Virus record (IMG/VR): IMGVR_UViG_3300028864_000016 | Coordinates: 62,001 to 126,000 of that record | Length of the DNA stretch: 64,000 nt | Reading direction: 5' to 3' (one strand) | In this document: piece by piece, positions 3,179-56,124 of the stretch | Position numbering within the stretch: position 1 is the stretch's first letter | How the letters are laid out: each line of letters starts with the position of its first letter | Translations under genes and position numbers: made by a program | Notes under the pieces: generated by a model | The model's database searches: none | The model's input: only the letters and a program-made list of their open reading frames with translations | Told to the model about the DNA's origin: nothing

Positions 3179-4043
3179 CGATTACTTAAAATTTCAGTTG
3201 AATAGGGGACTGGATATTATATTTAAAGATAAGAACCATCAACAAATTAAAGTTAAACAATCTAGAATTTCTGATATTGATGAAATAGGATTGCTAACTT
3301 ATTTAACTTTAACTTATATCTTTAGAATTCAAAAAGAACAGTTGAAATTATATGAAGATATTCAAGATCAATTGAAAAGCAAATCACTATTTGAATCTAT
3401 TGTAATACATGAAAATATATTAAATAGCAAAAAAGATTTTAACATTTCGGAATCAATGGTTATGTTACTAATACAATCATTGGCTTTCTTTTTAGATATT
3501 AAAGATTTTAATAGGATTGGAGTTTCTAATAATGTAGACGCTATAATTGTTTATGATTTTAAAGAACTTGAAGGACAAGTATATAAAGTTCCTATATTTG
3601 AATTAAATAATGATAACTTTGAAGAATTTAGTGAATTAATAAGAACGATAACTTGTACAGATGTAATTCAAGAAGAAAAAGAAGAAATGGATATGTTAGA
3701 ACATTATGACGATGAAGAACTACAGAGACTTCTAGAAGAACAATATAGAATATACAAAGAAGATAAGAAAAAGGAAGAAAATGAAAATAAAATAACTATT
3801 GATGAAGTTATAGCTTCAGTTTGTATGAGTGAGAATAGTAAATATAATTTTACTAATATTTCAGATTTAACAATTTGGCAACTTAACTTCTATTTTAATT
3901 TCTTGTTAGAAAAAGAAAATATTGAGATAGTTAAATCTCAATTTACTTCTGGAAATTATAACTTTGAAAAAGCTCCAGACTTAAATTGGATTAAGAAAAC
4001 TAAAATTAAATTAACAAAATGTAAAAAATTATTAAATGAATAA
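3171..4043 (+). CDS. Hypothetical tail-region protein
   Basis: ATG at 3171 preceded by GGTGGTG RBS, overlapping the previous stop region; in frame with ORF 3156..4043. Confidence 0.45.
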   Translation: MNSDYLKFQLNRGLDIIFKDKNHQQIKVKQSRISDIDEIGLLTYLTLTYIFRIQKEQLKLYEDIQDQLKSKSLFESIVIHENILNSKKDFNISESMVMLLIQSLAFFLDIKDFNRIGVSNNVDAIIVYDFKELEGQVYKVPIFELNNDNFEEFSELIRTITCTDVIQEEKEEMDMLEHYDDEELQRLLEEQYRIYKEDKKKEENENKITIDEVIASVCMSENSKYNFTNISDLTIWQLNFYFNFLLEKENIEIVKSQFTSGNYNFEKAPDLNWIKKTKIKLTKCKKLLNE

Positions 4044-4113
4044 ATTAAGTTCCTATAATTTCCATAGGAACTTTTTTATTATATAAAAATGTAAAATTTA
4101 AGGAGGAATATTA

Positions 4114-5217
4114 ATGGCAACTATTAATGAAAGATTTGGTATTTTAAATGCGAGTCAAGTAAAATTGAGAAATAGAACAACAAATAAATTATTACTTAAG
4201 ATACCACAAGCAAACAAATGTACATTTGAATACAAAACTACGGATAAATCAGCAAAGGAACAAGGTATAGAAAAACTATTTTGGTCAACAACACCAGTAG
4301 CAACCTACAAAATGGAAACTGAAACTATATCTTTTGCTCAACTTGCAGAAGCATTAGGTAGTGATGGATTAGTATTAAATACTGAAAATGAATCTTACTA
4401 TAAGGAAGAAGTATTTGTAGTAACAACAGATGGAACTTTAGTTCTTAATTTAAAATCTGAACCTATGAATGGAACAGTGATTAATTTTAATAAATTATCA
4501 CTTGGTGGAGAATTAGACATATCACTAGTTGGTGTAGTAGATGCTACTGATAAAAAGAAATTTACTATTACTAATTCAGAGTTAAGAATTGGGGATAAAG
4601 TTGAAGTAAATTATACAGAAGTTTTATCAGCAGGACAAGTTTATACATTTAAAGTATATGGTAATAAACAAGTAGATGCTAAAGAACTACAAGCAACCGT
4701 ATTAAGAAAAAATGTTGCTACAAATAAAATAGAATTAATGGATATGATTATTCCAAATGTAGTTATTCAATCTGGTGTAACATTATCATTTGACGCTGAA
4801 AACCCATCAAAATTTGAACTGAATTTCAAAGTACTTGGAGATCCGTTTAATACTGATGATGAAGGTAATCCATTATTCTGTGAATTTAAAGCAAAAGCAC
4901 CAAAAATTCCTGTAACTCCAATTGCTGATTTAGCAGGAGTATCAAATGTATCAACAAAAATTGATTTAACATTTACAGCACCAACTTCTTCAACATCAGT
5001 AGTATTAATGTATAAATTAAGTACAGATAGTACTTATAGTGCAGTGGCTACTAGTGGAACAACTGGGGTAAGAATAGCTTCTCCATTAACTGATACAAGT
5101 ACTTCAACTCAAGTATTAGGGCTAACGGCTTCAACATCTTACAATTTAAAAATTGTAGTAACAGGTGGTATTCATGAAGGTGAATCTAATCTTGTAACAA
5201 TTGTAACTATACCCTAG
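4114..5217 (+). CDS. Major tail tube protein with C-terminal FN3/Ig-like domain
   Basis: 367 aa, strong AAGGAGG RBS; beta-rich core ending ENPSKFELNFKVL; C-terminal FN3-like segment (IDLTFTAP...GLTASTSYNLKIVV). Confidence 0.7.
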   Translation: MATINERFGILNASQVKLRNRTTNKLLLKIPQANKCTFEYKTTDKSAKEQGIEKLFWSTTPVATYKMETETISFAQLAEALGSDGLVLNTENESYYKEEVFVVTTDGTLVLNLKSEPMNGTVINFNKLSLGGELDISLVGVVDATDKKKFTITNSELRIGDKVEVNYTEVLSAGQVYTFKVYGNKQVDAKELQATVLRKNVATNKIELMDMIIPNVVIQSGVTLSFDAENPSKFELNFKVLGDPFNTDDEGNPLFCEFKAKAPKIPVTPIADLAGVSNVSTKIDLTFTAPTSSTSVVLMYKLSTDSTYSAVATSGTTGVRIASPLTDTSTSTQVLGLTASTSYNLKIVVTGGIHEGESNLVTIVTIP

Positions 5218-11682: not shown

Positions 11683-13521
11683 ATGAGCAATGAAGAATAT
11701 CATAGAATTATAGAAAAATTCAAAGATGAAAATAAGGAATTAATTGAAAGTGGTAAATATAAAAAAATGTTTACTGAGAATTTACCAAAATGGAATAATG
11801 GGTGTTATATAGGTAAAATAAATTGGGAAAAAAGTATTGGATATAAAGTATTTTTTATATACGATAATTTAATAGGATGGATAAATATTATTAAATATAT
11901 TAAAGGAAAACAGCCAAAAGTAAAAATTTTATACAAAAGTAAGGAAGCTATGTTATTAACAAGTTGCTTTAGTAATTGCATAATAGGTGAGATACTAGGA
12001 AAGAAAACAAAAGATTTTAAAATAGAAATCGGAACTCATTATAAAGATAGTCAAAGGGATATAACTATTACGGATATGAAGAGAGAACAAAATGAAAATG
12101 GTAAATGGAGTAAATTATATAAATACACTTGCAATGTTTGTGGGTTTGACTGTGGAGAACACTACTATCCTAGAGATAAAAAATACAAAGACGAATTATG
12201 GATAGGGGAAAGTAATTTATTAAAACATAAACAAGGTTGTTCGTGTTGTCATAGTGTTATAGTAGTAAATGGAATAAACGACGTTATAACAACCGATCCT
12301 TGGATGATACCATATATAGGTAAAGAATGTGCTAAGACTCATACGCATGGGAGTAATGACAAAGTTCAAGTAACTTGCACTGACTGCGGAAGAATTAGAG
12401 ATAAGAAAATAGAAATAAATAAGATATACACTTACAAATCTATCGGGTGTTCTTGTAGCGATTCAGTTAGTTACCCAAACAAAATCGCATATTCTTTACT
12501 AGAACAATTAAATCAAATATATAAGTTTGATTATTTAGAACATGAATATTCGCCTGAATGGATAGGATTAAAAAGATATGATAATTATTTTATTTATCAA
12601 AAAAAACAATATATACTTGAAATGGATGGCAAGTGGCATTCTAAAGACAATAAAATGAGTGGACAAACCAAATATAAATCCAAAGCTATAGATGATTATA
12701 AAGATGAACAAGCTAGATTACATGGTATTGAAGTTATTAGAATTGATTGTACGATAAGCGATTTAAATTTTATTAAACAAAACGTATTGAGTAACAATAA
12801 TATAAATAATTTATTTGATTTACGCAAAATAGATTGGCAAAAGTGTGAAGATTTTGCTTTATCTAACTTAGTCAAAGTGGTTTGTGAATACAAAAGAAAC
12901 AATTCTAATATAACTGCTTTTAAAATTGCAAAAATAATGAAATTATCTCAAGGAACAATAAGAACCTATCTCAAAAAAGGCAGAGAATTATATTGGTGTG
13001 ATTATGATGCTAAAGAAGAGCAAAGAAAGAGTATAGAAAAATATAGATTAGATAAAAGTAAAGAAGTAAAAATATTTAAAGACGGAGTTTATTTAGGGAA
13101 ATTTATTTCATGTTCAGATTTAGCTAGAAAGTCAGAAAAATTATTTGGTGTTAAATTAAAAGGTGGAGGAATTATTAGAGTTTGTAATGGCAAAGCAATA
13201 CATTATAAAGGATATAAATTTGAATATGCAAATATAACAGACAAGGAACATATAATTATAGAACAAAATAAGTCTATTTTAAAGACAAAACATGTTATAT
13301 GTTTAAATAATAGAATTATAACATATAATGTAACACAATGTGCTAAGAATAGTTTACAATTATTTGGGATTAAAATATCATATTCATCAATATATAATAT
13401 TTGTAATAATAAACAAAAAGAGATAAAAGGCTTTATGTTTAAATATATTCAAGATTTAACAGAAGAAGACTATATAACATATGATATAACTAATAAGCTA
13501 AAAGAATTAAAAGCTATATAA
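11683..13521 (+). CDS. Free-standing homing-endonuclease-like protein (Cys-rich zinc ribbons, PD-(D/E)xK/Vsr-like core, NUMOD1-like repeats)
   Basis: CxxC pairs; RYDNYF...YILEMDGKWH nuclease core; C-terminal IIRVCNGK...YKGYKFEY and IYNICNNK...IKGFMFKY repeats. Confidence 0.7.
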   Translation: MSNEEYHRIIEKFKDENKELIESGKYKKMFTENLPKWNNGCYIGKINWEKSIGYKVFFIYDNLIGWINIIKYIKGKQPKVKILYKSKEAMLLTSCFSNCIIGEILGKKTKDFKIEIGTHYKDSQRDITITDMKREQNENGKWSKLYKYTCNVCGFDCGEHYYPRDKKYKDELWIGESNLLKHKQGCSCCHSVIVVNGINDVITTDPWMIPYIGKECAKTHTHGSNDKVQVTCTDCGRIRDKKIEINKIYTYKSIGCSCSDSVSYPNKIAYSLLEQLNQIYKFDYLEHEYSPEWIGLKRYDNYFIYQKKQYILEMDGKWHSKDNKMSGQTKYKSKAIDDYKDEQARLHGIEVIRIDCTISDLNFIKQNVLSNNNINNLFDLRKIDWQKCEDFALSNLVKVVCEYKRNNSNITAFKIAKIMKLSQGTIRTYLKKGRELYWCDYDAKEEQRKSIEKYRLDKSKEVKIFKDGVYLGKFISCSDLARKSEKLFGVKLKGGGIIRVCNGKAIHYKGYKFEYANITDKEHIIIEQNKSILKTKHVICLNNRIITYNVTQCAKNSLQLFGIKISYSSIYNICNNKQKEIKGFMFKYIQDLTEEDYITYDITNKLKELKAI

Positions 13522-14861: not shown

Positions 14862-16947
14862 ATGGCTGGTGAATATAAAAGTTCGATACGTCTTGGCGTT
14901 CAGTTAGAAAGTGAAAAAGATGTTAGTGGAAGATTACAAACTTTAATAAATACTTTACAAAAAGAAAAAATTAATTTAGATATAAATATTGCAAATTCAG
15001 ATGTAGCTAAACAATTAGAAACTTTAACTACTTTAGCAAATAATTTTAAAAATAGTTTGGGTAGTAATGTTTCATTAGGTAACGTGAATGAGATTATTAA
15101 TCAAGTTACCTCTGCAATGGTTAGTATGAATGACCAAGTATTAAAGACATCAAGAGTTGATATAGGTGATGGAATAACCAAACAATTAAAACAAACTGCT
15201 GAAGGTATTGGTGTAGTTAAAAGAGAATTACAATTATTAGATAAAGATGATAATAACACTTCTAAAATAAAACCTACAACTACAACAGATTATAATAAAA
15301 TAAGACAATCAATAGAAGATATAACAAAAGCACAAAAGCAATTAAATGCCTTAGAATCTAATGGATTTTCTGATATTAATAAGATTGCTTACTTAAAAAC
15401 TATGCTAAGTAATCCAAATAGTATAGGTTCAGATAATGAATTAAAAGGTTATTTAAATCAAGTTAAAGAATTGTTAGCAACTGAATCAAAAGTTATTGAA
15501 TATTCAAATAAATTAAATTCTCTGAAGTCTAATATGACTAATTTAACCGATGAGAAATATTCAAATGTTTTAAATACACAATCATTTGAACAAATAATTA
15601 ATGAGATAAATAATGCTCAAAATGGATTGAAAAACTTCGATGGTATAAATTTAAACGGCTTAAAACAACAATTTGATGAGTTGAGTGGAACTGTTTCTAA
15701 GTTTAGCACTGAAACTATAAGTTCTCAAAAAGCAGAACAAGATAATATAAAACAAAGAGAAAAATTAGAATCAGATAGGATATCTCAAATTCAGAAAGAA
15801 ATAGATTTAAGCAATAAATTAGTTGAAAATGAACAAAAGAGACAAGTAAAAGATGATTCAGCTAATTTAAAGCAATTAGAACAAGAACAGACTCTGTTAC
15901 AAAAACAAGCAGAAGCATACCAACATATAGACGCATTAAAATCAAACGGAATAGTAAATGAATCAGATATATCTAAACTTGAACAAATGGTTAAGAATTC
16001 TAAATCACTTCAAGATGTACGTAATGCAATTAATTCTATTATGAATACATCAATGATGAAAGAATCGTCTATTGTTACTATGTCTAAACAATTAGATGAT
16101 GCACAAATTAAATTGGATAAAATGAAGCAGAGTTTCGGAAATAAGTTGCCACAAGGCTTCGTAGAATCTACACAATCTGAAATTAATAAATTAAAAGAAG
16201 ATTTAACTAAAGTAGATAGTATGGGATTCAATGGTCTTAAAAATAGCTTGAATCAAGTTAATACTAATATGAAAGTAACCACTAACGAAACTCAACAATT
16301 AGTTAATTCTTTGAAAGAAACTAACAATGGTTCATTCTTTAGTGGAATCTCTAATTTTTTAGGTAAAGTTGGTATTTTTTATGGTGTTCAACAGGTAGTT
16401 CAAGAGATTAGTCAGCAGTTTAAAGATGCTAGTGAATATACTCAATCTTTAGATAAAAATGTGACAAATATTGAAATGATCACCTCGAAGAGTAAGGAAG
16501 AAGTTATTGGATTAACTAATCAATTTAAGGAATTAGGTGCTCAATTACATATAACTAATCAAGAAATGTTAGCAGGGTCAGAAGAACTTTTAAGGGCAGG
16601 TTTTGACAATAACACTACCAATAAAATGCTGGAAGCAAGTTCGATGGCTAGTAAGATTTCAGGTCAAACTACACAGGCAACAACAGAACAATTAATTGCA
16701 ATTAAGAATTCTTTCAATATGACTGGCGACCAAATGCAACATGTAATTGATGTTATTTCTAAATTAGATAATTCTAGTGCTACAAGTTTCGCTGAAATTT
16801 CTTCAGCAATTATGAGAACTAGTTTTAGTGCCCAACAAGCCGGAACAAGCTTTGATACGCTTTCAAGCTATGTAACTACAGTAAGTGAGAAGACTCGTAG
16901 ATCGGCAGAGACTATTGGAGAAGCATTTAAGAGTATTTATAGCAGAT
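14862..16947 (+). CDS. Tape measure protein, exon 1
   Basis: Long coiled coil, then TP901-type TMP core (LGAQLHITNQEMLAGSEELLRAG...TIGEAFKSIYSR); ends at a U typical of a group I 5-prime splice site. Confidence 0.85.
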
Positions 16948-17260
16948 TAATGATAAAAATAGTCTGCCTATACAGTAATGTATAGATAAAAACTAGGTGA
17001 ACCTGTAAATATAGGGTGTGCTATTAAATATAGTGCTAACGATGAAAGTCTAAGTTATTTAATAAAATAAATAATATGATAATATCGTGCCAAGTCTAAG
17101 TAATTAGAAAGGTGTAACGACTAAATTGGATTAATAATCCTAAGAGGTTTGAGGTGAAATTCCTTATTCCGTAGTGCCTAGCCCTCATGTGAGGTGAAGA
17201 GATAGTCTACTCCCACTTTTTAATAAGTGTTAAAGTATAGTGAAAACTAGGGTAAAAAGG
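16948..17260 (+). mobile_element. Group I self-splicing intron (313 nt, no ORF) in the tape measure gene
   Basis: P1: exon GCAGAU pairs with intron GUCUGC with terminal U-G; P2 ctatacagtaatgtatag; R element aacgacta; S element aagagatagtct; terminal G17260; splicing restores the frame SRYYNIKLGNIDEDG. Confidence 0.85.
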
Positions 17261-20200
17261 ATTATAACATAAAGTTAGGGAATATTGATGAGGATGGTAA
17301 AAACATAAATGACGTTGAGAAGGCAATGAATAACGTCGGTATTGCAATTCGTTCATCTAAGGGTGAGTTTAAGGATTTCGATGAGGTTTTAAATGAATTT
17401 GTGAATAAATATAAAAAAGGAACAATGAGTCAAGTTGATTTCTTAGCTGGAATAAACACGCTCGGTGGTTCTAGACAGAAAGAGACGATACTTAGTTTAG
17501 TCGAGAATTTCGACCAAGTTAAAAAACATCAAGATGATTTAACAAAAGCTACTGGTTCAGCTAAACAAATGTATGATGTTTATTCTCAATCTTTAGAAGC
17601 AAGAATATCTGATCTAAAAAGAGCATTTGAAGGATTGTATGAAAAAATAATGTCTTCGGATTCTTTAAAATGGCTAGTTTCAGAAGCTACTAATTTAATA
17701 ACTGCACTATCAAATCTAGATGGAAAATCAATAACATATATAGCAACAATTGGAACATTAAGTTTAGCATTGTCAAAATTAGTTAAAATTAACAAAGAAT
17801 TGATGCTATTAACTACAGAAGGTGGAATAGTAACTGGATTAACTAAATTTATTGGATTAGCTTCGGGAATGGTATCTTTAGAGAATGGGGCTACCGGTGT
17901 AGCAACTGCATTTGGTGTATTAGGAACTAGTATTAAAGGAGCTACTGCATCCGCTATGGGTTTTATAGCTACGCCAATTGGTTTAGCTATAACTTCAATC
18001 ACTGCTGTTATAGGAGTTGCAATTTATGGATTTGTTTCGTATCAACAACATCAAGCTGAGTTAACAGAACAATCTAAGTCTCTTAAATCAGCACTCGATG
18101 GCGTTAATAATTCTCTAAAGGGTGGAGACACTACTAAGGCACAAGAAGAAGCTAACAAAATGAAATCAGCACAAGAAAAGTTACAACAATATATTGAGTT
18201 AAGAAAGAAAGCACAAGATACTGATTCTAAATCATTAAATCCTACTGCAAGCGGTACAAACCAAACATCTGTAATAGAAGGGTTTAATCAAAAAATTAAA
18301 GAACAAATAAAAGTACTTACCGATGCTGGTTATACAGTTGAAGAAACTACTGGGAAAATAAAAGAATTTACTGACGCACAAGATAAAATATATAATACTA
18401 AAATAATAAATAGTATTAAAGAACAAACAAAATCACAATTAGAACATAGAGAAAATTTAGACAAAGTACAAGCTGAATATAATAATTATATTTCAACAGT
18501 TAAAAATTTGTATACAGAATATCAAAACTTATCTGCACAAGAAAATTTGTCGGCGGAACAAAAAACTAAACTACAGGGTACAGTAGAACAATTACAAGGT
18601 AAAATGAGTGGATTGAATGTCTCTATTGATGAAAATGGAAAAGTATTAATTTCAAATTCACCATTAATAGAAGCAAATATTCAGAAATTAATATCAGAAG
18701 GACTTACAGTTGATAATTTATCAGCTATTCGTATAACAGATTCTAAGGTAAATTCTCAATGGCAAGTAGGGAATTCTCAAGTTACATATAATGAAATAAC
18801 AAATAGAATTGAAATGTATAAAGCTGAGATAAAAGCGATACAATCTGTTATTCAAGCAAGAATGGCTGGGGCATCTGATTATTCAACGATGAGTATAGGT
18901 AAAGCACAAAGTCTAGAAGCTGGTTCACCAGAATTTGATAAACTAAAAGAAGAAACTGACCAATTACATGCGTATGAGAAAGCGAAAAAAGAAGCAGATG
19001 ATTTATATGCTGGGATAGGAAGTGTTGCATATTCTGCTCCTAGTGGAGGTGGTGTACAAACACCATCTAATGGAGATTATATGCCTTCTGGTGGGGATTC
19101 TAGCGAGAAAAAAAAGGCAGAAAAAGAACTTGAAGATTCAGAAAAGAAAATGTTATCTAATATCACAGATGCTTATAAACAAGCAAAAGATACTATATCG
19201 AATAATATTGAAGAAATAGATGCAAAGATAACTGGATTAGGTGATATAGATGATTCTAATTTTACTCAAAAAGTTTCACTTGTAAATGATAAAATAGGTG
19301 AACAAAAGCAAATAGTTGAAAAAGCACAAGAACAGTTAGACTCTTTAAAAAATACAACGGTAACAACGGCAGATGCACAAAAGGAACTTGAATCTGCAAC
19401 TTTATCTGCATCGAAGGAATTACGACAAGAAAGTTTAGAAGTAGCAAAATTACAATCAGAAATTGAAAAAACTGATATTGATGAACTAAAGAAAATGTAT
19501 GAAGATCAACAAAAGATTGAAACAGAAACTTTAGAAGCTAATCAAAAAGCACAAACAGATAAAATAGAATCTATTAAGAAAGCACAAGAAGATGCACATA
19601 ATGAGATAATGGATGACTATGAGGATGAATTAGATGCTTTAGATAAAAAATCTAAGAAATTAGATGAAGATAATGACAAGATAGATAGAGCTAATGAATT
19701 AGAAAAAGAGAAAAATGATTTAACAGAAAAACAAAAAGAGTTAAATAATGTTAAAAGTCAATTAACTAATCAAGTATATCAAAAGCAAGCAGATGGAACA
19801 TGGCAATTTGAGTATGTTGCAGATACTCAAAAGATTGCAGAAAAACAAAAAGAAGTTACAGAAGCACAAAAAACTCTTGATGATACAAATAGAAAAAATT
19901 CACTAGATGATGCTAAAAAAGAAATAGAAGATAAAAAAAGTGTTATTGAAGCTGATAAAAAAGCAGAAGATGAAGCATATACAAAGAAGAAAGCATATTT
20001 AGATGAGTATTCCTCTTATTTGAAAGAATCACAAGAGAGAGACACGAAACGTCTCGAGAATCATTATTCAGATATTGAAAAAATGGCAAAAGATACATTA
20101 AAGAAATTAGAAGAAGAGCATAACAATGATTGGAATGCTATTTCAGATTCAATTTCAGCTACACTAACTAGAACTAAAAAAGCATTAGAAGACTTAACTA

Positions 20201-21180
20201 CATTAAGAGCTAATTTTACAACTTCGGAAGCAAATGATGCTATTAATAGTGGGGATGTATCAGGATATTTAACAAAAAATAAAGATAAAATGAATTTAAA
20301 AGCAAGTGTAGATGAAAGTGATATAGATTCTCATTTAAATTCTATTAGTGACAAAGCAGATAAGGCTAACAATTCAGTTACTATATTGAATAAAACTTAT
20401 GACGAATTATTATCAAAGAAAAGCATTAATATAACCGAAGCTGATATTAATAATAAGAAAGTTCAAGTTCAAAAGCAAGTAGATATAGATAATGAAGGTT
20501 TAACAACTACTTTGAATAATTTAAAAGCTATTAATCTAGCAATTGAAACAGAAATAGACTCTCATTATTCAAAGGTAATTGACAAGCAAACTCAAGCACA
20601 ACAAAATGAGATGACTAGCTTACAAAACTTTGCAAAAGAATATACTATTTATTATAATAAATTCCTAGAATTAGTACAAACAGTTAATGACTTTAGATTT
20701 AATAATATTGTAGTGAATGTACAAGCATCTGTAGACAATGTATTACAAGGATTAGAAGTTATAGCAAAGGCTTATGAAAAATATGCTAAGGCATATAATA
20801 AAATGCACCCAGACGATACTATTTCTTCTAGTATTGATATATCAGATGTACAAAGTGCGAATACATCCTATAAAAAATCCGTAAGTGATTATCAAGCTAA
20901 TGTATTGTCATCATATTCTGCCGAAGCTTTTGAAAAATATGCAAGTCAAATTGGAAGTGGAATAGGAGATAGTTTATTGAGTAAGTTAAATAATTATAGT
21001 AGTTCTACTAGTAATATTAATAACACAAATAACGCTTCCACAACTAATAATAGTAATAAATCTACAACATCTAATACAACTAATGTAAATATAAATCAAC
21101 TTGATGTAAATACAAAGGACGCACAAAATTTATTAAATCAATTGTTAACAATAGTTAAAAATAAAACAAATTTGAGTTAG
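17261..21180 (+). CDS. Tape measure protein, exon 2 (spliced product 2001 aa)
   Basis: Frame is open upstream of ATG 17326 back to 17261; hydrophobic membrane segments, then long coiled coil; 2086+3920=6006 nt. Confidence 0.85.
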
Positions 21181-49244: not shown

Positions 49245-50897
49245 ATGGGAAAGAAAAAAAGAACACATGAACAATTTGTAGAAGAAGTATTAAATATTGT
49301 AGGTCATGAAAAGTATGAATTTTTAACTGAGTATCAAGGGTGTGATAAGAAAATAACAATTAAATGTAAAGAAGACGCATATAGTTGGAGTATACAAGCA
49401 AATGGATTTTTAAATAATGGTTGTCATTGCCCTAAATGTAATAATAAAGTAATGAATAAAGATACTGATTATTTTAAAACTCAATTAAAAGAATTATATG
49501 AAGATGAATACATTTGCTTAGGTGAATATACTGGAGCTAAGAATAAGGTTCTGATAAAACATAATATTGAAAATTGTGGTAATGAATTTATGACAACTCC
49601 TGACAGTATAGTAAATAAAAAGAATGGCTGTCCAATTTGTAATCACAGAAAAGGTGCAGATAAATTATTTATAAGTCATGAAGAGTTTTGTGATAGAACT
49701 TCTAAACTGTTTAATAATGAGTTTGAATTATTATCACTATATAAAGGTGGTAAAGAAAATATTACTGTAAAACATATCCCTTGCGGTAGAGTATATGATA
49801 GACAAGCAGGAGATATTTTACAAGGAAAAGGTTGTAAATTTTGTGGATTTGGAGCTACAAAAGATACTCAGTGGTTTAAAGAAAAGGTATATGAAATGTA
49901 TCAAGAAGAATATACTGTTCTAGGTGAATACATAAGTACAGACACAACGATATTAATGAGACATAACAAATGTGGAAAAATGTATTCAATTAGACCAATA
50001 GATTTTATACGAGGAACTAGATGTAAATGTGAGTCAACATCTAAAGGAGAAAAAATAATTGAAATATTTTTAAGGTTTAATAGGATAGAATTTAAACAAC
50101 AATATACGTATGAAGATTGTAAAAATAAAGCAAGATTGCCTTTTGATTGTGCCGTAAAAGATAATAATGGACAAGTTATATTTCTGATTGAATTTGATGG
50201 GATTCAACATTATGAACCTATATATGGAGAAGAACAATTTGCAGATACAAAGTATAATGACGCAACAAAGAACTCTTATTGTGAGGATAATAATATTCCA
50301 CTAATAAGAATACCATTTTGGGATATGGACAAGATAAATAATATTTTAATAGATTATTTTAAAATTATAAATATTGATACAAATATGCCTACGGAAGGTT
50401 TAAATATTTGGGAAGAAGGTAATCAATTTAAATTGATTAAACTTTTAAAAGAATTACCTAATGGAATATATCCTAAAAGCTATGTAATAGAACAGTTGAA
50501 TTCTACAACAGTAATAAGTAGTTTAGCTAATATATTAAGGATAGATTGTATAAAAGAGGTTTGTAATAAATTAAATATACAATATAATAATAAAACTATT
50601 ACAATATTAAATAATTATACAAATTATGATAAATACAATAACTTAATTGAAACAATTAAAACATATAGAATTACAAAATCAATAAATATGTTTGCAGATT
50701 TATATACTAATATGAGTAAAATATTGGATAAATGTTATAAAAAAGATATATTCTGTAGTATGAATTGTTTTCATGGATTAGATAAACAATCGTCTGAATA
50801 TAAATTTATAGAAAATTTTATGGAAGAAAATAATTTATATTTTGAACACAATTATGTTTGTAAAAAACAAATTAAAAATAGAAAGGACTTGATTTAA
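49245..50897 (+). CDS. Free-standing endonuclease-like protein (tandem Zn-ribbon repeats plus PD-(D/E)xK/Vsr-like core)
   Basis: Repeated EYxG...HxxCG...CPxC units; RLPFDCAV...LIEFDGIQHY...LIRIPFW core. Confidence 0.75.
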   Translation: MGKKKRTHEQFVEEVLNIVGHEKYEFLTEYQGCDKKITIKCKEDAYSWSIQANGFLNNGCHCPKCNNKVMNKDTDYFKTQLKELYEDEYICLGEYTGAKNKVLIKHNIENCGNEFMTTPDSIVNKKNGCPICNHRKGADKLFISHEEFCDRTSKLFNNEFELLSLYKGGKENITVKHIPCGRVYDRQAGDILQGKGCKFCGFGATKDTQWFKEKVYEMYQEEYTVLGEYISTDTTILMRHNKCGKMYSIRPIDFIRGTRCKCESTSKGEKIIEIFLRFNRIEFKQQYTYEDCKNKARLPFDCAVKDNNGQVIFLIEFDGIQHYEPIYGEEQFADTKYNDATKNSYCEDNNIPLIRIPFWDMDKINNILIDYFKIINIDTNMPTEGLNIWEEGNQFKLIKLLKELPNGIYPKSYVIEQLNSTTVISSLANILRIDCIKEVCNKLNIQYNNKTITILNNYTNYDKYNNLIETIKTYRITKSINMFADLYTNMSKILDKCYKKDIFCSMNCFHGLDKQSSEYKFIENFMEENNLYFEHNYVCKKQIKNRKDLI

Positions 50898-50898
50898 T

Positions 50899-51813
50899 AT
50901 GGGCAAAAGAGTACATATACATTATTTCACAAAGGAGAAAAACGATTTAGTAAATAAAGATAACAGAAAAAAATATGACAAATATCTAAAGAGTAATATT
51001 ATAAAGAACAAGGATGTTAAGGAAACAACTTATCTCGTTTACGAGAATTATTTCAACCAATTTTTGGTTTATCTTGCTGAGGAATGGGAAAACCTTGATT
51101 TATATTCAGAAGATTTTAGTGATAATGCTATTGATATTATGGAGGGGTTCATGTCTTTTTGTCAAGATACACTTCAAAATAATAAGAAAATAATTAATAC
51201 TAAAATATCAGCAGTATCTAGTTTCTTTTTATGGAGCGTTAAAAGAAAGGAAATTAAATTTCATCCCTTTCAAGGTCAATTAGATCGCATGAAGGGGGCG
51301 AGAGAAGAACATATTATAGGTAATTATTTTTTAAATGATGAACAAATATTAGCTATTCAAACTGGACTAATAGAAAATCCAGACAATAAATTTGATTTAT
51401 TAGATATAGTTCTATGGAACGTTATGTTGGATTCAGCTAATAGAATTGGTGCAATTGATAGATTAACACTATCTAGCTATGATGTAGACGAATGTTGTTT
51501 TAGAGATATACGTGAAAAAGAAGGCTATATTATTGACGTATCTGTAAATGAAAATACAGTGGAATTAATTCATACGTGGTTAGAATATAGAAAAGAACAT
51601 ATGGATAATTTAGAAATAGACGCTTTATTTATTAGTAGATACGGTGGAGTTTATAAAAAAATGTCTAAAGGAACTTTACAAGCAAGAATTAAAAAGATGG
51701 GTACTATTATAGGGATTGATGACTTTAGGTCTCACTGCGTCAGAAAAACCGCATCTAATAGTATGTTATCTAAGGGTATAGATCCTTCTTTAGTTAGTAA
51801 ATATTTAAACCAT
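50899..51813 (+). CDS. Tyrosine recombinase/integrase, exon 1
   Basis: DSANRIGAI (catalytic R), FRSHCVRKT (HxxR), YLNH (H); lacks the catalytic Tyr. Confidence 0.85.
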
Positions 51814-52102
51814 AAACTACAACTTGTGGCTTAATGGAGTAATCCATTTCGAATAACTCGCTTAATACGGGGAAGGCTAAATCTTTAAAGAGACATGCTA
51901 ACCTACCGTGCTAAATTATTCTATATAAATAAATTATTAGAATATAAAAGCCTAACGACTATTCCTTCGGGAAGTACCTATAAGTATAGGGAAATGGTGA
52001 GTCTCCTACTAGGAGAGTGATATAGTCTAATCTTATGGGAAATCATAAGCAGTTCATAAGAGAACGGTATAGGAATTAACGAACCTATATGAATATAAAA
52101 TG
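51814..52102 (+). mobile_element. Group I self-splicing intron (289 nt, no ORF) in the tyrosine recombinase gene
   Basis: P1: exon UUAAACCAU pairs with GUGGCUUAA with terminal U-G; P10: exon-2 AAG pairs with CUU; R aacgacta; S gatatagtcta; terminal G52102; splicing gives YLNH-KDVSTTLAFY. Confidence 0.85.
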
Positions 52103-52288
52103 AAGGATGTTTCAACCACATTAGCATTTTATCAAAAGCCTAAATCTTCAGTTGAGATAAGAGATGCTATAAAGAAACAAATTAAATTACTATCTAAAAA
52201 GAAAGAAGAAGGTATGGAAGATGAAATTGAAATACCAGTAGTAGTTGAATCACAGTCTAATTCATTTGGGAATAAAAGAAACTTCTAA
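52103..52288 (+). CDS. Tyrosine recombinase, exon 2 (carries the catalytic Tyr; spliced product 366 aa)
   Basis: KDVSTTLAFYQK matches the H-x-x-x-x-T-T-x-x-Y box II end of tyrosine recombinases. Confidence 0.85.
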   Translation, partial: KDVSTTLAFYQKPKSSVEIRDAIKKQIKLLSKKKEEGMEDEIEIPVVVESQSNSFGNKRNF

Positions 52289-55103: not shown

Positions 55104-55886
55104 CTAAACATTAGTATATTTATCGTCACTTCCTTTTATTAAATTACATAAATTATCATTATTCATGTATAGTTTATAATCTTCATTAAGCCATTTATGT
55201 ATTTTATTTAATCTTACTTCATTATAGAAATCTTGTCTTATATACCAATCTTCTAATTTATCCGTACACTTACTACTATTACAAGTTTTACAACTAGGTA
55301 CACAATTGGATAAATTGTTAGCTCCATTATGGTCTACGTGTTCCCTATGAAAATCAGTATGTTTTAATTTCCCTGCAAATGTATTAAAATGTTCTTCAAT
55401 TGGCAACCCACAATAGGCACAACAATTATTGAAATATTCCTTACAAGACAACCATTCTTCTTTTGTAATTGTATGTTGTTTATTCATTTCTCGATATTCT
55501 CTATATTCTTTCAACTTGTCAGGATTATTTCTTTGCCAGTTCTTTAAGTTGCCTTTTGCGCGACTTCTTCTTGACACTTCTCTAAAATATTCTCTTTTAT
55601 CAGGGGTATATTTTCTTTTATGTTCATTTCTTTTGTATTCTAAGTAATGTTCTCTATTATCAATTTGTTGATATTTACTACTATTTCTTACATTACATTT
55701 TTTACAATAAGGGAATAAACCATCTGAACTTCCTTTGTTCTTATAAAAATGTTCAGTATCATACAATATCCATTCATCTTCATCTGGAAAATATTCATTA
55801 TGCTTACTACAATATTTATAAATAACTCCATCTATTTCTTTATGATTCTGTTCATAATATATACGGTTTTTCTCTTCTTGATTCAT
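55104..55886 (-). CDS. HNH endonuclease
   Basis: CCAYCG...HREHVDHNGANNLSNCVPSCKTCNSSK. Confidence 0.85.
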   Translation of the reverse strand: MNQEEKNRIYYEQNHKEIDGVIYKYCSKHNEYFPDEDEWILYDTEHFYKNKGSSDGLFPYCKKCNVRNSSKYQQIDNREHYLEYKRNEHKRKYTPDKREYFREVSRRSRAKGNLKNWQRNNPDKLKEYREYREMNKQHTITKEEWLSCKEYFNNCCAYCGLPIEEHFNTFAGKLKHTDFHREHVDHNGANNLSNCVPSCKTCNSSKCTDKLEDWYIRQDFYNEVRLNKIHKWLNEDYKLYMNNDNLCNLIKGSDDKYTNV

Positions 55887-55935
55887 TTAATCACTCACTT
55901 TCTTTTATTATAAAAATTCCAATAATATTTAACTT

Positions 55936-56112
55936 TTATATTCTTTTAATTTGTTGATTATCTAATTTTGTTTCTAGTTCGTTTACCTTATTAATCAATT
56001 CATTGATTTTTTCAGTTTGTGCATTGCATACCTTGCAAGCAAGTATAATTGCTTCAGATTTATTAAACATACCTACAGAACCTATAATTTTTGTTTTTAA
56101 TTTTCCAATCAT
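55936..56112 (-). CDS. 58-aa hypothetical protein
   Basis: Translated by hand (MIGKLKTKIIGSVGMFNKSEAIILACKVCNAQTEKINELINKVNELETKLDNQQIKRI); AAGGAG RBS. Confidence 0.55.
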   Translation of the reverse strand: MIGKLKTKIIGSVGMFNKSEAIILACKVCNAQTEKINELINKVNELETKLDNQQIKRI

Positions 56113-56124
56113 ATCTAATGCTCC

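What the first reader, a model, noticed from the sequence alone, without database searches (positions are those of the whole stretch)
16948..17260. Group I intron splitting the tape-measure gene
Seen: the two ORF-track fragments join into one 2001-aa frame when 16948-17260 is removed; P1 with a U-G splice pair, R/S (P7) elements and a terminal G are all present. Unspliced mRNA would give a 707-aa truncated TMP. Known: phage group I introns mostly sit in nucleotide-metabolism, replication, terminase or lysin genes; a TMP location is uncommon to my knowledge. Inference: tail assembly depends on splicing efficiency.
Basis: partly seen in the sequence, partly recalled or inferred. Interest (0 to 1): 0.75.

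Follow-up and report, generated by a model that had tools for sequence, protein, structure and literature searches.

The report
Group I intron in phage tape-measure gene
A 313-base group I intron, with no gene of its own, really does interrupt the tail tape-measure gene of this 218-kb peat phage, but introns in phage tape-measure genes were already described in 2008, so this is a well-supported ordinary case.

Summary
Removing window 16948-17260 (313 nt) joins ORFs 14862-16985 and 17326-21180 into one 2001-aa frame reading ...KSIYSR-Y-YNIKLG.

- **Junction:** a 69%-identical tape-measure gene from another peat phage (L012) reads ...KSIFSRYENIKLG without interruption across this site. Psychrobacillus phage Perkons aligns gap-free.
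- **RNA:** the insert matches Rfam RF00028 (38.3 bits, below the 50-bit cut-off, E 2.9e-8). It has P1 with U·G at the 5' splice site, P3 to P9, an invariant P7 and a terminal G. It shares its core with at least 110 phage introns in IMG/VR. Across 24 of them, P3, P4, P6a and P9 show compensatory changes.
- **Not an assembly artefact:** independent contigs carry it.
- **Splicing not observed:** no RNA run holds the locus.

A tape-measure location is not new. Tourasse & Kolstø (2008) described group I introns at three sites in Bacillus cereus-group prophage tape-measure genes. Five other IMG/VR members of this intron family also sit in tape-measure genes.

Side findings: the relative L012 carries a different intron 32 nt upstream, and the same genome has introns in an integrase-like gene and in the large terminase gene.

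Verdict: real, a new member of a known kind, modest interest.

The parts
14862..16947 (+). Tape-measure gene, exon 1 (695 codons plus the first base of the junction codon)
   Evidence: ORF list and translation. PF10145 covers aa 553-695, profile positions 2-144 of 201, 71.9 bits. TIGR01760 covers aa 527-695, profile 15-184 of 349, 73.7 bits. tblastn finds annotated phage tape-measure genes.
16948..17260 (+). Group I intron, 313 nt, with no ORF of its own
   Evidence: RF00028 match at 16993-17230, 38.3 bits, E 2.9e-8 (E 2.5e-9 genome-wide). Unconstrained fold gives P1-P8, z -3.6. Helices listed. Covariation.
17261..21180 (+). Tape-measure gene, exon 2 (the last two bases of the junction codon, 1305 codons and the stop)
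   Evidence: Translation. PF10145 continues at exon-2 aa 16-56, profile 150-190. Collinear with the Perkons, PMBT24 and L012 tape-measure proteins.
16942..16967 (+). P1: exon GCAGAU plus intron UA (16942-16949) paired with the guide strand UAGUCUGC (16960-16967). U16947·G16962 marks the 5' splice site
   Evidence: Eight standard pairs. Predicted by the unconstrained fold.
16968..16985 (+). P2 hairpin (7 bp, GUAA loop). It contains the in-frame stop TAG 16983-16985 that ends the 707-aa unspliced product
   Evidence: A nearly identical P2 occurs in the tape-measure intron of L063.
16993..16999 (+). P3, 5' strand (CUAGGUG)
   Evidence: Pairs with 17175-17181. 100% standard pairs in 24 related introns, and 4 of 7 pairs show compensatory changes. 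An anchor-based test gave 35 of 48 perfect 5-bp matches against 0 of 48 in the control.
17002..17036 (+). Two hairpins between P3 and J3/4, called P3.1 (17002-17015) and P3.2 (17018-17036) here
   Evidence: Compensatory changes in family members (PT1-1 and EH93P1). P3.1 is a recognised optional element (PMC3873408).
17039..17113 (+). P4-P6 domain: P4 17039-17044/17083-17088, P5 and P5a, P6 17089-17091/17111-17113, P6a with a GUAA loop
   Evidence: Aligned to the P4/P5/P6 positions of RF00028. P4 is 100% paired with 2 compensatory pairs. P6a has 5 of 5 compensatory pairs.
17117..17123 (+). P7, 5' strand (A-C-GACUA, with C17118 bulged); the R element. G17119-C17207 is the likely guanosine-binding pair
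   Evidence: Invariant in 24 of 24 family members. Matches the RF00028 consensus AGACUA. The assignment of the G-binding pair is by analogy with known group I structures.
17128..17170 (+). P7.1 (17128-17140) and P7.2 (17146-17170) hairpins, between P7 and the 3' strand of P3
   Evidence: The same arrangement occurs in EH93P1, PT1-1 and L067.
17175..17181 (+). P3, 3' strand (UGCCUAG)
17183..17194 (+). P8 hairpin (CCUC-AUGU-GAGG)
   Evidence: RNAalifold predicts P8 with compensatory changes in the family.
17203..17208 (+). P7, 3' strand (UAGUCU), preceded by J8/7 UGAAGAGA; the S element
   Evidence: Invariant AUAGUCU in 24 of 24. Matches the RF00028 consensus.
17212..17252 (+). P9 three-way element (CCC/GGG, an inner hairpin and a GAAA-capped hairpin)
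   Evidence: P9 and the GAAA hairpin show compensatory changes in the family.
17260..17260 (+). Terminal guanosine (omega-G), the last intron base
   Evidence: Only this G keeps the frame; using G17259 gives an immediate stop, as the sequence shows. Relatives also end in G 5-12 nt after GGGUA.

Best explanation
Window 16948-17260 is a group I intron of the phage IA type (P7.1 and P7.2 present, plus two extra hairpins after P3). It has no ORF and lies inside the conserved TP901/PhageMin_Tail domain of a 2001-aa tail tape-measure gene.

Inferred mechanism, from the established group I pathway:
1. The transcript folds so that the guide sequence GUCUGC pairs with the exon end GCAGAU.
2. A free guanosine bound at P7 attacks after U16947.
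3. The freed exon-1 3'-OH then attacks after G17260.
4. This joins AGCAGAU to AUUAUAAC and restores the codon UAU.

Only spliced mRNA encodes the full tape measure. Ribosomes on unspliced mRNA stop 12 codons into the intron, in P2, before the catalytic core. The intron has no nuclease gene of its own. Its spread is therefore passive with the phage, or depends on recombination or a nuclease supplied in trans.

What is shown: the sequence anatomy, covariation in the intron family, and restoration of a conserved protein. What is inferred: catalysis and in vivo splicing.
For: - RF00028 match with E 2.9e-8 and E 2.5e-9 genome-wide.
- An unconstrained fold reproduces P1-P8, z -3.6.
- All 18 helices consist of standard pairs.
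- The core motif is shared with at least 110 IMG/VR phage stretches and with introns that split annotated genes, for example the large terminase gene of Enterococcus phage EH93P1.
- Across 24 family members P3 and P4 are 100% paired with compensatory changes, P6a and P9 covary, and P7 is invariant.
- The P3 anchor test gave 35 of 48 perfect matches against 0 of 48 in the control.
- Excision gives one 2001-aa frame.
- That frame aligns gap-free with L012 (GESFKSIFSRYENIKLG, uninterrupted at this site) and with Perkons.
- PF10145 and TIGR01760 are cut in mid-domain by the insert.
- The identical insert is found in several independent metagenome contigs.
Against: - The Rfam score of 38.3 bits is below the curated 50-bit cut-off, and the whole-window gathering scan found nothing.
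- P10 is weak, about 3 bp.
- No RNA reads cover the locus, so no spliced junction was seen.
- Self-splicing was not tested.
- Only one close intron-free allele (L012, with its twin L126) is available.
Confidence: 0.9

Rival explanations
1. The intron is decayed and no longer splices. The tape-measure gene is then a pseudogene, or is expressed as two separate polypeptides: 707 aa, plus 1284 aa from ATG 17326.
For: Splicing was not observed. The Rfam score is below the cut-off. There is no homing endonuclease, as expected late in an intron's life cycle.
Against: Every core helix is intact, and all family-invariant positions (P7, P6, J8/7) are kept. The same sequence was recovered from about 20 peat runs dated 2019 and 2024, which argues for a replicating phage. 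The break falls inside a conserved domain that is continuous in all homologues.
Confidence: 0.07
2. The insertion is an assembly artefact or chimera, or another kind of element (IS or MITE, group II intron, intein).
For: The source is a metagenome assembly.
Against: Independent contigs from other samples carry the identical insert and span both borders. It has no terminal inverted repeats and no transposase. It is not in frame, so it is not an intein. The only RNA-family match that is more than marginal is group I.
Confidence: 0.01
3. The intron splices and also has a regulatory role. Slow or conditional splicing would set the supply of tape-measure protein or the timing of tail assembly, or yield a useful 707-aa isoform.
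For: Only logic supports this: full-length protein requires splicing, and the unspliced frame ends cleanly after 12 intron codons.
Against: There is no evidence of regulation. The relative L012 lacks an intron at this site. Related introns sit in many unrelated genes, which fits a selfish passenger better.
Confidence: 0.05

Closest known systems
TMP-IVS1, IVS2 and IVS3 group I introns in tape-measure genes of Bacillus cereus-group prophages, such as the lambda01-like prophages (Tourasse & Kolstø 2008, PMC2504315)
   Same: Group I introns (IA1 or IA2) interrupt a conserved phage tape-measure gene at several alternative sites. Some lack a complete endonuclease gene. Related introns are adapted to different sites through changes in P1.
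   Different: The host phage differs (a 218-kb phage from peat, 27% G+C). Whether any insertion site coincides was not determined, and sequence relatedness to those introns was not tested.
The phage intron family sharing the core GUGCCAAG...AAGGUGUAACGACUAA. Examples are the large-terminase intron of Enterococcus phage EH93P1 and an intron of Staphylococcus phage PT1-1 (Sextaecvirus)
   Same: The architecture is the same (P3, UGAAC, two hairpins, J3/4, P4-P6, P7, P7.1/P7.2, P3', P8, P7', P9). Identity over the core is 76-82%.
   Different: Those two carry an ORF in a loop (P8 in PT1-1, the P5 region in EH93P1) and sit in other genes. This one has no ORF and sits in a tape-measure gene.
Staphylococcus phage Twort orf142 introns (group I, in a tail-tube gene)
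   Same: Phage group I introns in a tail structural gene (PMC11878797). There is 82-87% identity over about 60 nt of the P7'-P9 region with Twort-like phages.
   Different: Similarity is limited to the 3' part. The gene and the insertion site differ. From memory, not checked here: the Twort introns are of subgroup IA2, self-splice in vitro, and one has a solved crystal structure.
Group I introns in capsid and minor-tail genes of Cluster J mycobacteriophages (PMC3706429)
   Same: Introns in late structural genes that are spliced during late expression.
   Different: High-G+C hosts and different genes. Relatedness was not examined.

Membership tests
Group I intron (Rfam RF00028) | Covariance-model score at or above the curated cut-off (50 bits) | tested here: not met
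   38.3 bits, E 2.9e-8 locally, E 2.5e-9 for the genome. The model mis-aligns P1-P3 because of the extra hairpins. A sibling intron in L088 also scores only 36.3 bits. The match is statistically significant but below the curated score.
Group I intron | P1 formed by an internal guide sequence, with a U·G pair at the 5' splice site | tested here: met
   GCAGAU·UA pairs with UAGUCUGC, and U16947 pairs with G16962.
Group I intron | Terminal guanosine at the 3' splice site, and exon ligation that restores the host gene | tested here: met
   G17260. The joined frame of 2001 aa reads SRYYNIKLG, against SRYENIKLG in the uninterrupted L012.
Group I intron | P7 helix with the conserved R and S elements, forming the P3/P7 pseudoknot | tested here: met
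   GACUA pairs with UAGUC and is invariant in 24 of 24 relatives. P3 brackets the 5' strand of P7.
Group I intron | P3-P8 and P4-P6 domains supported by covariation | tested here: met
   P3 has 4 of 7 and P4 has 2 of 6 compensatory pairs, with 100% pairing. P6a has 5 of 5. P8 was found by RNAalifold.
Group I intron | P10 pairing of the guide sequence with the 3' exon | tested here: inconclusive
   At most about 3 bp (exon-2 AUU with AAU 16958-16960), by inspection.
Group I intron | Guanosine-dependent self-splicing, or a spliced RNA in vivo | not testable with these tools
   No RNA run holds the locus, and nothing was laid from three metatranscriptomes.
Subgroup IA (phage type) | P7.1 and P7.2 hairpins between P7 and the 3' strand of P3 | tested here: met
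   17128-17140 and 17146-17170. The finer assignment to IA1 or IA2 was not tested.
Mobile intron with its own homing endonuclease | An endonuclease ORF inside the intron | tested here: not met
   The intron is 313 nt with no ORF. Endonuclease-like genes stand free elsewhere, at 11683-13521 and 49245-50897.
Phage tail tape-measure protein (TP901 / PhageMin_Tail type) | PF10145 or TIGR01760 core domain above the cut-off, very long mostly helical protein, and a position in the tail module | tested here: met
   PF10145 71.9 bits and TIGR01760 73.7 bits. Homology to annotated tape-measure genes. A tail-protein gene lies downstream, phrog_1887.

The most novel reading that the evidence does not exclude
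The conserved core of tape-measure genes may be a recurrent landing zone for ORF-less group I introns in large Firmicutes-type phages. At least four or five distinct sites lie within about 65 codons: this window's site, L012's site 32 nt upstream, two sites in L063 and two in L088.

The introns appear to move between unrelated genes that share a short target. The L012 tape-measure intron and this genome's integrase intron are 75% identical and share the flank ACCAU^A(A)GGA.

They may be mobilised in trans by free-standing endonuclease genes such as 11683-13521 and 49245-50897 ('collaborative homing'). The intron would then also protect its own phage's gene from cleavage.
Probability: 0.2. Interest if true: 0.5.

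Novelty: new member of a known kind. Interest (0 to 1): 0.3.

Why it matters
- **Annotation:** gene callers split this tape-measure gene into 707-aa and 1284-aa pieces. Read correctly, it is one 2001-aa protein, and that length is what any estimate of tail length should use.
- **Detection:** a large, recognisable phage intron family scores below Rfam's cut-off (36-38 bits) and is missed by standard scans.
- **Biology:** it adds an environmental, multi-intron example (tape-measure, integrase-like and large terminase genes in one 218-kb genome) to the known cases of introns in late structural genes. The neighbouring-site polymorphism with L012 gives natural material for studying how ORF-less introns move. 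It does not open a new class of system.

Tried and rejected
- **Whole-window Rfam scan at gathering threshold:** no hits. It even missed the 61.8-bit intron at 51809-52049 that later searches found, so this is a filter effect and not absence.
- **RNA evidence:** two run searches and one read-laying found no RNA covering the locus.
- **Close relatives in annotated phage records:** megablast of 20 kb found none.
- **Metagenome scan for more tape-measure relatives:** it returned only L126, a twin of L012.
- **Alternative P3 pairing (GUGCUAU 17018-17024 with GUAGUGC 17170-17176):** rejected. That 5' strand forms a local hairpin that covaries in PT1-1 and EH93P1, whereas CUAGG/CCUAG covaries across the family.
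- **Weak second RF00028 hit at window 16760-16985 (16.8 bits):** it overlaps the end of exon 1 and P1-P2, and I regard it as a spurious sub-alignment.
- **The 612-aa ORF at 11683-13521 as a paralogue of the HNH gene at 49245-50897:** no pairwise similarity.
- **Weak ProA hit in exon 2 (18.7 bits against a 1500-bit cut-off):** dismissed as noise, probably from low-complexity sequence.
- **The count of structure pairs:** not used, to avoid typing a long bracket string. The same counts were computed by script.

Full report
**Setting.** The window is bases 62001-126000 of a 218,173-base IMG/VR virus record, estimated 88% complete. It has 26.9% G+C. It comes from peat metagenomes, and about 20 DNA runs dated 2019 and 2024 hold the stretch.

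**Observation.** ORF 14862-16985 (707 aa) and ORF 17326-21180 lie in different frames. Removing 16948-17260 (313 nt) gives a 6006-nt frame of 2001 codons with no internal stop. It reads GEAFKSIYSR-Y-YNIKLGNIDEDGK, and the junction codon is T|AT.

**The host gene is a tape-measure gene.**
- Exon 1, aa 553-695, matches PF10145 positions 2-144 of 201 at 71.9 bits.
- Exon 1, aa 527-695, matches TIGR01760 positions 15-184 of 349 at 73.7 bits.
- Exon 2, aa 16-56, continues PF10145 at positions 150-190. The insert therefore cuts the domain in the middle.
- tblastn with the end of exon 1 and with the start of exon 2 hits the same annotated tape-measure genes. In Psychrobacillus phage Perkons the two matches are separated by exactly the expected 10 codons.
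- A tail-protein gene follows.

**The decisive homologue.** IMG/VR contig 3300030114_000013 (L012, with its twin L126) encodes a tape-measure protein 69% identical over exon 1. It reads GESFKSIFSRYENIKLGAVDDDGK with no interruption across our site. A MAFFT alignment of the spliced protein with L012 and Perkons is gap-free through the junction.

**The insert is a group I intron.**
- RF00028 matches 16993-17230 at 38.3 bits. That is below the 50-bit cut-off, but E is 2.9e-8 and 2.5e-9 genome-wide.
- An unconstrained fold gives P1, P2, a long-range P3, two hairpins, P4, P5/P5a, P6/P6a, P7.1, P7.2 and P8, with z = -3.6.
- My helix list consists only of standard pairs. P1 is GCAGAU·UA with UAGUCUGC, with U16947·G16962. 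P7 is GACUA/UAGUC with C17118 bulged, and the intron ends at G17260.
- L2 and L6a are GUAA loops and L9b is a GAAA loop.
- P10 is weak.

**Comparative support.**
- blastn finds 76-87% identity between parts of the core and introns or intergenic inserts in Enterococcus, Staphylococcus, Enterocloster and Lactobacillus phages. These include split large-terminase genes.
- The motif GTGCCAAG-N(8-30)-AAGGTGTAACGACTAA occurs in at least 110 IMG/VR stretches.
- An anchor-based test of P3 gave 35 of 48 perfect 5-bp complements, with more than 20 different sequences, against 0 of 48 for a shifted control.
- In a 24-member alignment (A1), RNAalifold independently predicts P3, P3.1, P4, P5, P6a and P8, and 18 of 30 predicted pairs carry compensatory changes.
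- My own counts give P3 and P4 100% paired (4 of 7 and 2 of 6 compensatory), P6a 5 of 5, P9 and P9b covarying, and P6 and P7 invariant.
- This settled an ambiguity about P3 and showed that the two hairpins between P3 and J3/4 are real. P3.1 is a recognised optional element (PMC3873408).

**Not an artefact.** Identical copies occur in three other IMG/VR contigs. Logan contigs of an independent run span both borders.

**Splicing itself.** No RNA run holds the locus, and three metatranscriptomes from one of the source studies laid nothing. Catalysis is therefore inferred.

**Mechanism (inferred from the established group I pathway).**
1. Guanosine attacks after U16947.
2. Exon 1 attacks after G17260.
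3. The joined mRNA encodes the 2001-aa protein.

On unspliced RNA, ribosomes terminate at TAG 16983-16985 in P2, upstream of the catalytic core. From memory, not checked here, this is the usual arrangement in phage introns. There is no intron ORF, so the intron cannot home on its own.

**Novelty.**
- Tourasse & Kolstø 2008 (PMC2504315) described IA1 and IA2 introns at three sites in tape-measure genes of B. cereus-group prophages. Some lacked endonuclease genes, and P1 was adapted to each site.
- Twort orf142 is a tail-tube gene (PMC11878797).
- Cluster J mycobacteriophages splice introns in capsid and minor-tail genes (PMC3706429).
- In my survey, 84 distinct family members fall into 20 host-gene clusters. 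These are terminase-like (34), NrdD, Pol III alpha, Pol A, RNR, and tape-measure genes (5).

The tape-measure location is thus a minority location, but an established one.

**Side findings.**
- L012 carries a different group I intron (3855-4127, 69.2 bits) 32 nt upstream of our site.
- That intron is 75% identical to one in this window at 51814-52102 (61.8 bits). The latter splits an integrase-like tyrosine-recombinase gene just before the catalytic-Tyr region, and it has similar flanks ACCAU^A(A)GGA.
- An HNH endonuclease gene lies directly upstream of that gene.
- The large terminase gene, upstream of the window, has two introns.
- L063 and L088 tape-measure genes each carry two introns in the same domain.

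**Verdict.** This is a real group I intron with correctly placed splice sites. It is a new member of a known kind, and interest is modest.

Noticed in passing
window 51814-52102 (exons 50899-51813 and 52103-52288): A second group I intron (RF00028 61.8 bits, above the cut-off) splits an integrase-like tyrosine-recombinase gene (PF00589, phrog_1). The break falls just before the catalytic-Tyr region, and the exons join in frame as ...KYLNH|KDVSTTLAFYQK. I did not look for published precedents for an intron in a phage integrase gene.
   Followed up: partly
L012:3855-4127 (also L126:2175-2463) compared with window 51814-52102: The 69%-identical relative has no intron at our site. It carries a different group I intron (69.2 bits) 32 nt upstream in the same tape-measure domain. 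That intron is 75% identical to this genome's integrase intron, and both have the flank ACCAU^A(A)GGA. This suggests one intron lineage occupying two unrelated genes through a short shared target.
   Followed up: partly
G000:C1:55038-55278 and 55813-56116 (L002/L003, upstream of the window): Two more group I introns (61.3 and 38.4 bits) split a gene whose first piece matches the large terminase subunit (phrog_5989). The genome therefore has at least four group I introns.
   Followed up: partly
window 49245-50897: A free-standing HNH or homing-endonuclease gene (phrog_559, E 1.6e-75) ends 2 bases before the intron-containing integrase-like gene. It is a candidate trans-acting nuclease for that ORF-less intron.
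   Followed up: no
window 11683-13521: A 612-aa ORF lies two small genes upstream of the tape-measure gene. It matches phrog_4538, with a homing-endonuclease-like segment (phrog_9084, aa 223-377) and a weak HNH hit. It has no Pfam or NCBIfam match and no pairwise similarity to the HNH gene at 49245.
   Followed up: partly
L063 (minus strand, about 3600-3000) and L088:3040-3692: Other IMG/VR tape-measure genes carry two introns each inside the same conserved domain. In L063 they are only 11 codons apart. L088 has RF00028 hits of 36.3 and 24.4 bits. P1 and P2 of L063's first intron closely resemble those of our intron, with the guide sequence changed to fit its own site.
   Followed up: partly
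window 1-64000 (method note): The whole-window Rfam scan at gathering threshold returned nothing. Yet 51809-52049 scores 61.8 bits when searched locally or through the genome search. Members of the tape-measure intron family score only 36-38 bits. Standard scans under-call these introns.
   Followed up: yes
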